Shown here: piece after piece, positions 52,237 to 56,055 of the stretch
How the letters are laid out: each line of letters begins with the position of its first letter
Position numbering within the stretch: the stretch's first letter is position 1
Virus record (IMG/VR): IMGVR_UViG_3300042934_000594
Coordinates: 1 to 64,000 of that record
Length of the DNA: 64,000 bases
Direction: 5' to 3' (one strand)
Notes under the pieces: generated by a model
The model's database searches: none
What the model was told of the DNA's origin: nothing
Seen by the model: the letters and a program-made list of their open reading frames with translations, nothing else
Program-made: the position numbers and the translations under genes

Positions 52237-52372
52237 GACCTGGGCTTCCAAAAGGGTTGTGAAAAATAACTAACGTTACTTCTATGCGCAGTTATTGGTT
52301 AATATTTATGGATTGACTGTAGTTAACGCTCATAACATCGAGTTGCTTTGCTCCAAACCTGGGAGATACACA

Positions 52373-54463
52373 ATGGGTACCACGAACGCCTCTCCAAAGA
52401 TTGTCTTTGGGGGTATCGACGATCAGTCCCGGCGGCCGCTCGCGCGTCCCGCTGTGACTTTCGCGCAACACGCCCCGCTGCTCCGTCTGTTTGCTCAGAC
52501 CGGGCCTGAGACCACTGAATGGGTGGGCACCGAATCTGGTGGTTTCGCTTCACTCTACGGTGCGCTGACCCTGGCCCGTCGTGGTCAGTATTACAACCTT
52601 CAGTCGATGCTGGCTGAAAAGCTCCTGGGTGAGGGTAACGGCTTTGCAGTCAAACGCCTGATTCCAGACGATGCGCCTGCACCTGCGCGCATCATCATCG
52701 CACTCGAGCTGGTGCGTGACGCCATCCCTGCCACGACCGTGGCGCTGTCTGGGTTTGACTACCCGGAAGATGTGGCTGACGTCAGCGGTAATACCGCTCA
52801 AGCTCAAGCCGTCGGCGACACCGTCAATGGCCTGCGTGCTCGCATCATCACCATCCAGGACAACCAGTCGGGCGTGGGTAAGCAACGCGTTCTGCCAGGT
52901 ACTCTGGTGGCTGAATCCGATTCGACTCAGTCGATGGTTTACCCGCTGTTCGAATTGCCGGCTTCTTTTGTCGGCAGTGGCGGTAACCTGCTCGGCTGGC
53001 GCGCATGGGCGCCCACCACGCAAGACGACATCGGTTTCGACGAAACCACCGCTGCTCAGTTCAAGACCCGCATGTACCGCATGCAGTTCTTGCAGCGTGC
53101 CACCAGCTCGGCTTCCCCGGCTGTGGTCAAGACTGCCCTGGGTGACGACTACGTTGACGTCTGCTTCACTGAAGGCGCCTACAGCGAGTCCACTGACAAA
53201 GAATACTACATCGGCCAGACGCTTGTTCAAGCGTACAAGGACGACGGTTTGGACAGCGGCCTGGCGCCCCTGTACTCCCCGTTCGAAAAGATCTACGTCT
53301 ATAAGGACAACATCAAAACTGTCCAGGACCTGATCTACGAAGTAGAGCTGGAAGTCAACCCGGCTGCTCAGGCCCTGATCGCGGCCCCTGGCCAGATCGA
53401 TTTCCTGACCGGTACCGGTATCGACGGCGACCTGTACCAGGGCATCCTGTTCGAAGGTCCGCTCAACGGCGGCATCAAGCTGGGTGACCAGACCACTGTT
53501 TATGCAGTGGGTGGCGGTGACGGTACCACCGACCTCGCCATGTACGAGAAGTTGGTCAACCTGGAAAACGACAACTTCGGTCAGCTCAAAGACCAGTACG
53601 AAAACTTGGCGGTCTTCCCGTTCACTCGTCTGTACGACACTGGCCTGTCCATGGACGGCAAGTATCGCATGATGGGTGTGCTGGGCAAGCGTCAGGACCT
53701 GATGCTGACCTTCACCACGTACGTGGAAGCAGAAGGTGTGGCACCGACGGCGTCTGAAGAGCTGTCCCGTGCGCAAGCCCTGACCACGCGTCTGAAGGCG
53801 TTCCCTGAGTCGACGCTGTATGGCACTCCAGTGTGCCGTGCTGAAATCATCATGCAAACCGGTTACCTGGCAGGCGGTGGTTACACCAAGCCTGTGCCAC
53901 AGGTCATCGACTACGCCGTACGTTGGGCTCGCTTCGGCGGTGCTGGCAGCGGCAAGATGCGTGAAGGCTTCGACATCGACGTCAGCCCGAACAACCGTGT
54001 GACTGAGATCAAAGACCACAACGTCAAGTATTTCAACGCACGGGCGCAATCCAACGCCTGGGTCAACGGTGGTTCGTACTCGTTGTCTTACGACAACCGC
54101 AGCATGTACTACCCGGCGATCCACACCGTCTACAACGACGACACCTCGGTGTTGACCTCGCCGATCACCACGTCGATCTGCTGCGACCTGATGCGCCTGT
54201 CGCGTCTGGTACACGCTGATTTCTCCGGTAACGCCAAGCTGACCGATGAGCAATTCATCGAGCGCTGCGATGCGCGCCTGCTGGCTCTGGTGGACGGTCG
54301 TTACAACGGTCGTGTGGACCTGGTACCCACCACGTACTTCACCGCTGATGACAAGAACAATGGCTTCAGCTGGCACGTGAAGTGGGAAGTCCGTGCGAGC
54401 GTGCCTCGTACCGTGATGTACCTGGACATCATCACCGAACGTCGGGACTCCGTTGCGGCGTAA
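52373..54463 (+). CDS. tail sheath protein (phiKZ gp29-like)
   Basis: NA.PKIVFGGIDD.S, QH.PL, YDTG; 696 aa upstream of tube gene. Confidence 0.88.
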   Translation: MGTTNASPKIVFGGIDDQSRRPLARPAVTFAQHAPLLRLFAQTGPETTEWVGTESGGFASLYGALTLARRGQYYNLQSMLAEKLLGEGNGFAVKRLIPDDAPAPARIIIALELVRDAIPATTVALSGFDYPEDVADVSGNTAQAQAVGDTVNGLRARIITIQDNQSGVGKQRVLPGTLVAESDSTQSMVYPLFELPASFVGSGGNLLGWRAWAPTTQDDIGFDETTAAQFKTRMYRMQFLQRATSSASPAVVKTALGDDYVDVCFTEGAYSESTDKEYYIGQTLVQAYKDDGLDSGLAPLYSPFEKIYVYKDNIKTVQDLIYEVELEVNPAAQALIAAPGQIDFLTGTGIDGDLYQGILFEGPLNGGIKLGDQTTVYAVGGGDGTTDLAMYEKLVNLENDNFGQLKDQYENLAVFPFTRLYDTGLSMDGKYRMMGVLGKRQDLMLTFTTYVEAEGVAPTASEELSRAQALTTRLKAFPESTLYGTPVCRAEIIMQTGYLAGGGYTKPVPQVIDYAVRWARFGGAGSGKMREGFDIDVSPNNRVTEIKDHNVKYFNARAQSNAWVNGGSYSLSYDNRSMYYPAIHTVYNDDTSVLTSPITTSICCDLMRLSRLVHADFSGNAKLTDEQFIERCDARLLALVDGRYNGRVDLVPTTYFTADDKNNGFSWHVKWEVRASVPRTVMYLDIITERRDSVAA

Positions 54464-54490: not shown

Positions 54491-55354
54491 ATGTCGCGCT
54501 ATACCAGTCCCTTCGTTGGACAAACCGGGTACGGTCGCGGTCAGGCAGACAACACCATCAACCTGGCGCAAGCCGGTACGATGCAGTTTGCTCCAGACTT
54601 GGCCAACATCGCCTCCAACACGCCGTACGTGCGGCGCAACGTCATCCCTTTCTTGATCGAGGCACCACGCTTCTTCCAATTCACCTCCAACCCTGAGTTG
54701 ATGGTGCGTTGCCTGAAGGCCATGATCGAGAACCACACGCGTACCATCGATGGTCTGAACCAACAGATCAACGTGGACCTGGCTGAAGCGCCATACGGCG
54801 GTTCGGGCGAGCGCATCCAGGTGGCGACCAACGTCACCCGTGCAACCTCGGCCCCAAGCCATGGCATGTGGGAACTGCAAGGTCGTGCGGTGAGCCGCTT
54901 CATCAAGTGGTGGATCACCTACGGTATCGGCGACGAAAACACCAAGGTGCCTTTGGTGGTTGCAGACGGTCAGGTGAAAGCCTCCGACTACGACGCAACC
55001 TTCTACGGCGCCACCGTGCTGTACGTCGAGCCGGATCCGACCTTCACTCAGGTGGTCAGTGCCTGGTTGTGCACCAACATGTTCCCGACGGCGACTCCGC
55101 CATGGGAAGGTGGTAAGGACGCTTCGATTCTCGGTCAAAACCTCGACATCACCCTCGAGTTCACCGCGATCGCAGACGTCTCGATCGGTACTCAACTGTT
55201 CGCCCAGCAGCTGCTGCAAAGCCTGTCGGTCGGCGGTCTGAACCCGAACGAGAACAAGCTGTGGCTCGAATCGATCTCGGCCGACGTGAAAGCGGCGACC
55301 AACGGTATCGAGAACCAGCTCGAAGAAGGCGCGGCCAACCGCATCAGCTTCTAA
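54491..55354 (+). CDS. tail tube protein (phiKZ gp30-like)
   Basis: [23 protein letters not shown]; follows sheath. Confidence 0.85.
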
Positions 55355-55364
55355 GGAGTAAGGT

Positions 55365-55535
55365 ATGGCAAATCCAACCACTCCGGTTCAGACCGGTCAA
55401 GACGGCACCACCAAACCTGCGGCTGCGTCCTACGCAGACCTCGTCGGTTCCAGTGTGGCCAAGGCGACCAATGGCATTGCTTCTCAACTGGCTGCCGGGG
55501 CGAAAGCACGGGCAACGGTGAGCAAGCCGTCCTAA
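55365..55535 (+). CDS. 56-aa protein resembling the tail-tube C-terminal helix
   Basis: AAGGAG RBS, ATG 55365, TAA 55533-55535; VAKATNGIASQLAAGAKAR vs tube [19 protein letters not shown]; missed by ORF track. Confidence 0.75.
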   Translation: MANPTTPVQTGQDGTTKPAAASYADLVGSSVAKATNGIASQLAAGAKARATVSKPS

Positions 55536-55539
55536 CACG

Positions 55540-55569
55540 AAGGCCTCCCTTCGGGGAGGCTTTTGTGCC
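55540..55569 (+). terminator. GCCTCCC-family hairpin closing the sheath-tube operon
   Basis: gcctccc-ttcg-gggaggc-ttttgtg. Confidence 0.75.
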
Positions 55570-55588: not shown

Positions 55589-55601
55589 TGCCTTATATGA
55601 C
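55589..55601 (+). promoter_or_regulatory. candidate early promoter (TGCCTTATATGAC)
   Basis: Motif family member between terminator and next gene. Confidence 0.35.
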
Positions 55602-55626
55602 ACGTACCCCCACCCCTGGAGTCAAC

Positions 55627-56055
55627 ATGCCTACAACCTTCGTTATCGGTGTGCGCACGCACAACGTCACGCCTGAAGACTTGCCCGGCTTTGCCCGTAC
55701 GTTCGACTTAGAAGACCGCATCCCACATGAAGCTCCGGTCAATGTGTTTGCCGGTTACATCCTGGGGGAACAGACCTGGGTGATCAGCTTTCCAACCGTG
55801 CACGTAGACATTGATACCCTGCACTTTATCTGGGACGAAAACCTGGAAGACCAGGCCCACACCATGCGGTGGGTGGCGCACTGGCAAGAACTCTTTGGTG
55901 GTGTGTGCACCGGTTATCAATGGAGCGGTACCCGAAGCCATACTACGCTGGTGGGGTACAACACCATTCGCCTGCTGCATCAGATGGTGCAGTGGAAAAT
56001 TGAATCCGGGGCTGAAGACCGGGCGGAACGGTTGCCGTGGGACCTGATTCACTGA
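55627..56055 (+). CDS. hypothetical protein
   Basis: GGAG RBS. Confidence 0.7.
   Translation: MPTTFVIGVRTHNVTPEDLPGFARTFDLEDRIPHEAPVNVFAGYILGEQTWVISFPTVHVDIDTLHFIWDENLEDQAHTMRWVAHWQELFGGVCTGYQWSGTRSHTTLVGYNTIRLLHQMVQWKIESGAEDRAERLPWDLIH

What the first reader, a model, noticed from the sequence alone, without database searches (positions are those of the whole stretch)
55365..55535. Unannotated 56-aa ORF that copies the tail-tube C-terminal helix
Directly after the tube stop, with an AAGGAG RBS and before the operon terminator, is a 56-aa ORF. Its GSSVAKATNGIASQLAAGAKAR aligns with the tube end [22 protein letters not shown] (11 of 22 identical), with the acidic residues swapped for Ala. The DNA has diverged at synonymous sites, suggesting selection on the peptide. 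It may mimic the tube arm to chaperone, cap or pace tube or sheath polymerisation (inference).
Basis: partly seen in the sequence, partly recalled or inferred. Interest (0 to 1): 0.6.

Follow-up and report, generated by a model that had tools for sequence, protein, structure and literature searches.

The report
Small gene copying the tail-tube arm
Right after the tail-tube gene of this soil jumbo phage lies a real, conserved 56-residue gene whose core is an old copy of the tube protein's C-terminal arm (the arm that ties one tube ring to the next), so it is a good but unproven candidate for a new tail-assembly factor.

Summary
The window is the first 64 kb of a 269-kb phiKZ-like (Chimalliviridae) phage from soil. 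It carries sheath (52295-54463), tube (54491-55354), the 56-aa ORF (55365-55535, AAGGAG 6 nt upstream) and a strong terminator hairpin.

- **Similarity to the tube end:** it is significant. 0 of 2000 shuffles reach the score. A tube-arm HMM finds the ORF as the best non-self hit among 4127 genome ORFs (E 2e-5). The profile-profile comparison gives E 3e-5.
- **Known ORF family:** it belongs to the family annotated as hypothetical protein PHIKZ030.1 (phiKZ), gp013 (PhiPA3) and gp33 (201phi2-1). I found it directly after the tube gene in all 9 GenBank and 25 IMG/VR relatives examined.
- **Selection and distribution:** dN/dS is about 0.25. The gene was not found in seven more distant Chimalliviridae.
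- **Published context:** cryo-EM shows the tube's C-terminal extension docks onto the ring above. PHIKZ030.1 is in no solved structure. phiKZ Tn-seq tolerates no insertion in it.

Best reading, by inference: a non-virion assembly factor that occupies the arm's docking site on free tube subunits. The one complex prediction gave no answer. The gene is real and paralogous to the arm (about 0.9). The mechanism is about 0.35.

The parts
52295..54463 (+). Tail sheath gene. The listed ORF starts at TTG 52295; the family match begins at residue 27, so the true start is probably ATG 52373.
   Evidence: phrog_3242 tail sheath, E 1.9e-230; ORF list
54491..55354 (+). Tail tube gene, 287 aa, homologue of phiKZ gp30
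   Evidence: Pfam PF23806 Phage_TTP_14, E 1.3e-94; phrog_3185; PDB 9xpf PHIKZ030, E 1.9e-119
55262..55351 (+). Part of the tube gene encoding residues 258-287. This is the distal C-terminal extension ('arm') that the small ORF resembles.
   Evidence: Alignments. The role of the extension is taken from PMC13250141, PMC9700779 and the Goslar preprint.
55353..55358 (+). Shine-Dalgarno AAGGAG. It overlaps the tube stop codon and lies 6 nt before the ATG.
   Evidence: Read directly from the sequence. Relatives have AAGGAA/AAGGGG at the same place, or a one-base stop/start overlap (TGATG or TAATG).
55365..55535 (+). 56-aa gene, member of the PHIKZ030.1 family: disordered N-terminal 22 residues, then a helical core.
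   Evidence: Family HMM built without this protein finds it at E 3.1e-9; without its clade, 1.8e-8; from distant clades only, 6.5e-6, among 4127 genome ORFs. Synteny in 34 of 34 relatives. AlphaFold2 model: helices 23-26, 29-32, 38-52, pLDDT 65.
55431..55511 (+). Core of the small gene (residues 23-49), homologous to tube residues 258-284
55536..55567 (.). Operon terminator: a 14-bp hairpin with a T-run, able to fold on both strands
   Evidence: dG -25.8 kcal/mol, z -4.8. The scanner lists the same hairpin on the minus strand.

Best explanation
The ORF is a genuine, expressed small gene of the PHIKZ030.1 family. It is specific to the Pseudomonas phiKZ / PhiPA3 / 201phi2-1 / Noxifer / Psa21 group of jumbo phages.

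Origin: it arose by an old partial duplication of the 3' end of the tube gene. It consists of a variable, disordered N-terminal stretch plus a free-standing copy of the tube's C-terminal arm.

What the arm does: in the assembled tail, each subunit's arm reaches up and docks on the tube ring(s) nearer the capsid.

Most likely role (inferred): a non-virion tail-assembly factor, made together with the tube protein. It occupies the arm's docking site on unassembled tube subunits and so holds back baseplate-independent or head-to-tail self-association. At the growing tube end it would be displaced by the arrayed arms of the last ring, in the manner of donor-strand complementation and exchange.

Shown: the gene is real, conserved and under selection; it is homologous to the arm; the arm is the inter-ring connector; the phiKZ orthologue tolerates no transposon insertion and is absent from the solved virion structure.

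Inferred: binding to the tube, the site of binding, and the chaperone or capping effect.
For: **Real gene**
- Present directly after the tube gene in 9 of 9 GenBank relatives and 25 of 25 IMG/VR relatives with enough flank.
- 56 clusters at 90% identity in the protein collection.
- dN/dS 0.09-0.51 in three clades, against 0.02-0.13 for the tube.
- 98-100% identical across 48 phiKZ-like records.
- In a roughly 7% diverged relative, the contig across the ORF has no indel, while the intergenic stretch after the terminator has 28 gap letters.
- Start signals are kept: an SD sequence or a one-base stop/start overlap.

**Homology to the arm:**. The nearest relative's small protein scores 76-77 against tube ends of distant clades.

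**Not a modelled virion part:** neither PHIKZ030.1 nor the family profile matches any PDB chain, and the phiKZ atlas text does not mention it.

**Importance**
- phiKZ Tn-seq gives 0 insertions in PHIKZ030.1 after trimming, and 2 single-read insertions in the raw table. That matches the essential gp30.
- The next gene, PHIKZ031, takes 13 (trimmed) and 40 (raw) insertions, so polarity does not explain the result.
- Only 25 of 210 genes under 500 bp lack insertions.

**Transcription:** PHIKZ030.1 was added to RefSeq from RNA-seq. Its read counts are as high as or higher than gp30's, although the gene is about a fifth as long.
Against: - No binding evidence. The complex prediction of tube residues 1-247 with the small protein scored ipSAE 0.16 against a mark of 0.32. 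The tool's verdict is 'no answer'.
- No protein-level detection was found. PHIKZ_p06 is absent from the held part of a co-fractionation MS table that lists other small '_p' proteins; that file was cut when stored.
- Seven more distant Chimalliviridae with homologous tubes and a recognisable arm motif have no such gene after the tube gene. Whole-record searches of five of them also found none (positive control). Such a factor is therefore not generally needed for this tube type.
- No excess similarity between a phage's small protein and its own tube, so no sign of co-evolution.
- Column conservation of the two families correlates only weakly (Spearman 0.25, p 0.15).
- Zero insertions in 183 bp is only moderately significant.
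Confidence: 0.4

Rival explanations
1. Minor virion component. The free arm copy plugs arm-docking sites that have no tube ring below them, namely the first tube ring sitting on the initiator, or it sits at the terminator end.
For: - The tube-arm HMM finds no third copy of the arm motif in the genome, so the tube initiator appears to lack an arm.
- Six copies per virion would be easy to miss by mass spectrometry.
Against: - The phiKZ atlas assigns 40 proteins, including the very small gp163.1, and resolves the tube-initiator junction without mentioning gp30.1.
- No PDB chain matches.
- 201phi2-1 gp33 carries no virion-MS note, while its neighbours gp30 and gp32 do.
- One-base stop/start overlap with the tube gene in many relatives, and RNA counts as high as the tube's, suggest far more than six copies are made.
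Confidence: 0.12
2. Competitor or timer. The arm copy binds the terminator or another arm-accepting partner, tuning when the tube is capped or how tube and sheath growth are coordinated.
For: - The top ring's arms must be received by the terminator hexamer (Goslar and phiKZ descriptions), so a second arm-accepting surface exists.
- In one relative (L018) a terminator-like hairpin separates the tube gene from the small gene, which hints at dosage control.
Against: - Nothing ties it to the terminator or the sheath.
- Tail length in such phages is normally set by a tape measure (general knowledge).
- The same lack of binding data applies as for the best explanation.
Confidence: 0.1
3. Duplication relic that kept the arm-like helix but now does something unrelated to tube assembly, for example a host-directed or regulatory small protein.
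For: - Fast evolution outside the core.
- The 201phi2-1-type members carry extra conserved N-terminal (YPL) and C-terminal (PIEAGG-x-Y) motifs that the tube lacks.
- The tube's invariant A-D-V and final R are not kept in many small proteins.
- No own-tube co-variation.
Against: - Strict linkage to the tube gene in 34 of 34 genomes, with translational coupling.
- Late structural operon.
- Seven of the eight best-conserved columns of the small family (aromatic 23, G28, G37, L38, Q41, L42, A46) fall on well-conserved tube columns with the same residue types (a post-hoc count).
Confidence: 0.2
4. Chance ORF or untranslated 3' region, conserved only for RNA reasons (mRNA stability ahead of the terminator).
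For: - No peptide evidence was found.
- In phiKZ, RNA counts over this segment are as high as or higher than those of the five-times-longer tube gene, which could reflect a stable 3' fragment.
Against: - dN/dS is well below 1 in three clades.
- The frame is kept open in 34 of 34 genomes despite saturated synonymous divergence.
- Amino-acid motif conservation comes with codon turnover.
- Start signals are conserved.
- Family HMM E-values are 1e-6 to 1e-9.
Confidence: 0.03

Closest known systems
PHIKZ030.1 (phiKZ locus tag PHIKZ_p06), PhiPA3 gp013, 201phi2-1 gp33, Noxifer gp23, Psa21 gp013, Phabio gp021: uncharacterised small proteins
   Same: - Same position directly after the tube gene, same strand, and size of 52-99 aa.
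- Shared core motif (aromatic, hydrophobic pair, G/S, then G-L/I-x-x-Q/D-L-x-x-x-A).
- The profile match holds when the window's protein and its clade are left out.
   Different: - The window's member is short (56 aa).
- It lacks the YPL and PIEAGG-x-Y end motifs of the 201phi2-1 type.
- It is net basic.
- It is so diverged that tblastn against 50,697 phage records finds nothing.
C-terminal extension of the Chimalliviridae tail tube protein (phiKZ gp30, PDB 9xpf; phiKp24 gp119, 8bfk; Goslar gp217)
   Same: The core of the small protein aligns without gaps to tube residues 258-284. It shares the conserved aromatic, G, L/I, Q, L, A and (in this clade) R positions.
   Different: It has no tube body, hence no beta-sandwich core. 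The DNA is diverged (46% identity), so this is an old paralogue and not a recent repeat.
Tail assembly chaperones encoded after tube genes (lambda gpG/gpGT, P2 gpE/E+E', Mu gp41/42)
   Same: Small accessory gene placed right after the tube gene in a tail operon. Not expected in the virion.
   Different: - No Pfam or PHROG match.
- No frameshift partner. An in-frame TAA at 55359-55361 sits just before the ATG, and the frame relation to the tube varies among relatives.
- It is followed by a terminator, not a tape-measure gene.
- Those chaperones coat the tape measure; they are not copies of a tube arm (general knowledge).
Polymerisation-arm capping chaperones: chaperone-usher donor-strand complementation (PapD/FimC), flagellin FliS, type III needle chaperones
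   Same: The proposed logic is the same: a separate protein occupies or shields the surface used for subunit-subunit joining until the subunit reaches the growing polymer. This rests on general knowledge and is an analogy only.
   Different: Those chaperones are folded proteins unrelated to the arm they replace or bind. Here the candidate is a paralogous copy of the arm itself. No binding has been shown.

Membership tests
PHIKZ030.1-like small proteins (no Pfam/PHROG family yet) | Significant profile match to family members from other phages | tested here: met
   HMM built without the window's protein: E 3.1e-9. Without its clade: 1.8e-8. From the Psa21, phiKZ, PhiPA3 and 201phi2-1 types only: 6.5e-6. 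In each case it is the top hit of 4127 genome ORFs.
PHIKZ030.1-like small proteins (no Pfam/PHROG family yet) | Encoded directly downstream of the tube gene on the same strand, coupled by an SD sequence or a stop/start overlap | tested here: met
   10-nt gap with AAGGAG in the window. Same arrangement in 34 of 34 relatives.
PHIKZ030.1-like small proteins (no Pfam/PHROG family yet) | Translated into a stable protein | not testable with these tools
   Only indirect support: dN/dS about 0.25 and RNA-seq support in phiKZ. No peptide evidence was found. No RNA run holds this phage.
Tail tube protein Phage_TTP_14 (PF23806) | Tube body: N-terminal domain plus central beta-sandwich domain matching the Pfam model | tested here: not met
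   The small protein has no Pfam hit. Only its residues 21-56 align, and only to the last ~35 columns of the tube family. The neighbouring 287-aa gene is the member (E 1.3e-94).
Tail assembly chaperone (gpG/gpGT type) | Family match, a programmed frameshift product, and a position between the tube and tape-measure genes | tested here: not met
   - No Pfam or PHROG match.
- An in-frame stop lies just upstream of the ATG, and the frame offset varies among relatives.
- A terminator follows, then an unrelated 152-aa ORF.
Virion structural protein of phiKZ-like phages | Found in the solved virion structure or in virion mass spectrometry | tested here: not met
   - No PDB chain matches PHIKZ030.1 or the family profile.
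- It is not named in the phiKZ atlas.
- 201phi2-1 gp33 lacks the virion-MS note that gp30 and gp32 carry.
- Caveat: early MS searches predate the annotation of this ORF.

The most novel reading that the evidence does not exclude
A phage keeps its tail-tube subunits from joining prematurely with a free-standing paralogous copy of the tube's own inter-ring arm. This 'donor-arm complementation' chaperone would be exchanged for the real arm at the growing tube end and would be essential for tail assembly in phiKZ-like phages. It would be a tail-assembly factor of a kind not described in the papers and family libraries I searched.
Probability: 0.3. Interest if true: 0.75.

Novelty: new variant of a known kind. 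Interest (0 to 1): 0.58.

Why it matters
phiKZ-like phages are the main model for nucleus-forming jumbo phages and are used in phage therapy work. Their tail was solved only in 2026, and how the unusually interlocked tube is assembled is unknown.

This small gene sits in every genome of the group, appears to be needed in phiKZ, and is absent from the virion model. It has been carried for years as 'hypothetical'. Recognising it as a copy of the tube's polymerisation arm turns it into a concrete hypothesis that can be tested cheaply (binding, knock-down, electron microscopy of lysates).

If the hypothesis holds, it adds a new way of controlling self-assembly: a paralogous arm mimic. It would also be a handle for blocking or engineering tail assembly. 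If it fails, the gene is still a clean example of a new gene born from the 3' end of its neighbour.

Tried and rejected
- **Complex prediction** (tube residues 1-247 with alignment A4, plus the small protein with alignment A3): ipSAE 0.16 and 0.15, under the 0.32 mark, and controls were not run. The verdict is 'no answer', so it is evidence neither for nor against binding.
- **AlphaFold2 model of the full tube** from 23 close homologues: pLDDT 40, too poor to define the arm socket. I could not read PDB coordinates, so the docking site of the arm could not be compared.
- **Pairwise BLASTP of small protein against tube:** no significant hit at the arm. Profile and shuffle tests were needed.
- **tblastn of the window's small protein against phages:** no match.
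- **Pfam and PHROG scans of the small protein:** nothing. **PDB sequence searches:** nothing meaningful.
- **Test for co-evolution or gene conversion** (each small protein against every tube end): the own-tube score is not elevated. Gene conversion is rejected as the cause of the similarity, and so is recent duplication (46% nucleotide identity).
- **Conservation-profile correlation:** weak and no better than shifted registers.
- **Frameshift or read-through fusion to the tube:** rejected. A TAA sits in the small ORF's frame at 55359-55361, and the frame offsets among relatives vary (-1, 5, 10-15, 72 nt).
- **Charge swap (acidic to Ala) as a family feature:** rejected.
- **RNA evidence for this phage:** no RNA run holds it. 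Only DNA contigs were laid.
- **Literature search for gp30.1 / PHIKZ030.1:** no paper discusses it.

Full report
**What the window is**

The window is the first 64 kb of a single 269,430-bp virus record, 56% G+C, about 90% complete by CheckV. Its DNA is held by soil metagenome runs, and no RNA run holds it. The region of the finding is a late structural operon on the + strand:
- Tail sheath, 52295-54463 (phrog_3242, E 1.9e-230; the true start is probably ATG 52373).
- Tail tube, 54491-55354 (Pfam PF23806, E 1.3e-94; phiKZ gp30 in PDB 9xpf, E 1.9e-119).
- The 56-aa ORF, 55365-55535.
- A hairpin terminator.

The closest cultured relatives are Pseudomonas jumbo phages of the phiKZ kind. Tube identity is 69% to Noxifer, 64% to PhiPA3 and 201phi2-1, and 60% to phiKZ/PA7. 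The closest metagenomic relative has 78%.

**Checking the observation**

- The tube stop TAA is at 55352-55354 and AAGGAG at 55353-55358. ATG at 55365 follows a 6-nt spacer, and the ORF stops at 55533-55535.
- The hairpin 55536-55567 folds at -25.8 kcal/mol (z -4.8) and is followed by a T-run.
- Residues 23-49 of the small protein align without gaps to residues 258-284 of the tube, with 11 identities.
- 7 of those 11 use different codons, and nucleotide identity is 37 of 81.

The similarity is not chance:
- No shuffle out of 2000 reaches the local alignment score (z 5.7).
- A 33-column HMM of the tube's C-terminus, built from 23 tubes, finds the small ORF as the best non-self hit among all 4127 six-frame ORFs of the genome. 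Its E-value is 2.1e-5 and the next best is 2.1.
- The reverse search ranks the tube end second.
- The genome search does the same in this genome, in 201phi2-1 and in Noxifer.
- Profile-profile comparison gives E 3.1e-5.
- Composition-adjusted BLASTP misses it.

**The ORF is a known, conserved but uncharacterised gene**

A small ORF sits directly after the tube gene and is annotated 'hypothetical protein' in RVTF4, Noxifer (gp23), HPP-Temi, PhiPA3 (gp013), 201phi2-1 (gp33), PA7/phiKZ (PHIKZ030.1), Phabio (gp021) and Psa21 (gp013). The same holds in 25 of 25 IMG/VR relatives with enough flank.
- A profile search returns 56 clusters of 52-99 aa, none with a name or a Pfam domain.
- HMMs built without the window's protein still pick the window's ORF as the top hit of the genome: E 3.1e-9 without the protein itself, 1.8e-8 without its clade, and 6.5e-6 from the most distant clades only.
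- dN/dS is 0.09-0.51 (about 0.25) in three separate clades, against 0.02-0.13 for the tube.
- The phiKZ version is 98-100% identical in 48 records.
- A roughly 7% diverged relative in a public run keeps the ORF free of indels, while the spacer after the terminator has 28 gap letters.
- The start is always coupled to the tube gene. It is either a one-base stop/start overlap (TGATG or TAATG), or a spacer of 5-15 nt that in most of these relatives carries an AAGG-type SD. One relative has a terminator-like hairpin in between and a GTG start.
- The frame relation to the tube varies, and in the window a TAA lies in the ORF's frame just before the ATG. A frameshift or read-through fusion is therefore excluded.

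The gene is clade-restricted. Seven more distant Chimalliviridae (PCH45, RP12, Eowyn, DT01, RSL2, Ea35-70, SPFM17) have a convergent gene right after the tube gene. For OBP the fetched record stops at the tube gene's end, so nothing can be said about it. Whole-record searches of five of the seven (PCH45, RP12, Eowyn, DT01, RSL2) find no homologue, and the same search finds it in 5 of 5 clade genomes.

**Anatomy of the protein**

The AlphaFold2 model (64-sequence alignment, pLDDT 65) gives a disordered N-terminal 22 residues, two short turns (23-26, 29-32) and a helix at 38-52.
- Only the core is shared across the family. Its pattern is: aromatic, two hydrophobics, G/S, then an invariant G, L/I, x, x, Q/D, L, x, x, x, A.
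- Seven of the eight best-conserved columns of the small family align with well-conserved tube columns of the same residue type (W258, S263, G272, L273, Q276, L277, A281). This is a post-hoc count, and the overall conservation correlation is weak.
- The 201phi2-1-type members add conserved YPL and PIEAGG-x-Y end motifs that the window's protein lacks.
- A phage's small protein is no more like its own tube than like other tubes. The similarity therefore reflects an old duplication, not gene conversion or tight co-evolution.

**What the copied segment does in the tail**

Three cryo-EM studies of this tube family agree that the long C-terminal extension is the inter-ring connector:
[quoted passage not shown] The arm motif (x-A-D-V-x-A-x-x-G-aromatic) is recognisable even in distant tubes that lack the small gene.

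**Functional data on the phiKZ orthologue**
- PHIKZ030.1 (locus tag PHIKZ_p06) entered RefSeq on RNA-seq evidence. In published count tables it has as many or more reads than the five-times-longer gp30 gene (PMC12571901 supplements).
- In genome-wide transposon mutagenesis of phiKZ (bioRxiv 10.1101/2025.11.23.690004) it has no insertion after trimming and two single-read insertions in the raw table, like the essential gp30.
- The next gene, PHIKZ031, takes 13 (trimmed) and 40 (raw) insertions with thousands of reads, so polarity cannot explain the gap.
- Only 25 of 210 genes under 500 bp lack insertions. For a 183-bp gene this is suggestive, not proof.
- It is not a chain in any PDB entry and is not named in the 40-protein phiKZ atlas, which does include another tiny '.1' protein.
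- 201phi2-1 gp33 lacks the virion-MS note that its neighbours carry.
- I found no peptide evidence. PHIKZ_p06 is missing from the held part of a co-fractionation table that lists other small '_p' proteins (PMC10449902).

**Most likely mechanism**

A free copy of the polymerisation arm is made together with the tube protein, is apparently needed, and is not seen in the virion. That fits an assembly factor that occupies the arm's docking site on unassembled subunits and is displaced at the growing tube end. Every step after 'homologous to the arm' is inference.

My one complex prediction (tube core without its own arm, plus the small protein) scored 0.16 against a mark of 0.32. The tube monomer model was too poor to locate a socket.

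The rivals are:
- A low-copy virion plug for the sockets of the first tube ring. The initiator seems to lack an arm, but the atlas shows no such chain.
- A competitor acting on the terminator.
- A duplication relic with an unrelated job.
- A non-coding artefact, which is all but excluded.

**Comparison with known systems**
- It is a member of the PHIKZ030.1 family.
- It is not a tube protein, because it has only the arm.
- It is not a gpG/gpGT-type tail assembly chaperone: it has no family match, no frameshift and no tape-measure gene downstream.
- In logic it would work like arm-capping chaperones of other polymers (chaperone-usher donor-strand complementation, FliS, needle chaperones). It differs in being a paralogue of the arm itself. 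That comparison rests on general knowledge, not on a test here.

**Verdict**
- The ORF is not new as an annotation. Its relation to the tube arm, and the resulting hypothesis, do not appear in the literature I could search.
- Confidence that it is a real gene paralogous to the arm is about 0.9. Confidence in the chaperone or capping mechanism is about 0.35.
- No alternative genetic code was used.
- The reads tool was given 3901 letters.

Noticed in passing
L018:2362-2595 (IMG/VR UViG_3300037502_002993): In this relative (tube 72% identical) a terminator-like GC hairpin with a T-run lies between the tube stop and the small ORF. The ORF starts with GTG after a GAGGA. The small gene may be expressed at a lower, read-through-dependent level there.
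   Followed up: partly
P0006, P0009-P0034 and other 201phi2-1-type family members: The longer (75-99 aa) members carry two further conserved motifs, absent from the window's protein and from the tube: Y/F-P-L near the N-terminus and P-I/V-E-A-G/N-x-x-Y at the C-terminus. This suggests extra partners or functions in that sub-family.
   Followed up: no
phiKZ NC_004629.1 23336-23518 (PHIKZ_p06), supplements of PMC12571901: RNA-seq counts over the 183-nt PHIKZ030.1 are as high as or higher than over the 882-nt tube gene. Late in infection they are 62,614 against 45,277, several-fold higher per nucleotide. This could reflect a stable 3' fragment ahead of the terminator or separate regulation.
   Followed up: no
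window 55597-56055 (+): The 152-aa ORF after the terminator has no Pfam or PHROG match. It differs from the genes found at this position in the relatives, so the neighbourhood downstream of the small gene is not conserved.
   Followed up: partly
window 55536-55567: The terminator hairpin is flanked by an A-rich run upstream and a T-run downstream, and the scanner reports it on the minus strand as well. It could therefore act in both directions.
   Followed up: no
window 52295-52373: The sheath ORF as listed starts at TTG 52295, but the family match begins at residue 27. ATG 52373 is the more likely start.
   Followed up: no
window 55806-55947 against runs X3 and X4: Two soil runs hold a near-identical strain with 13 differences in 3.9 kb. 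These cluster in the sheath 3' end and in the 152-aa ORF downstream. None is listed inside the small ORF.
   Followed up: partly
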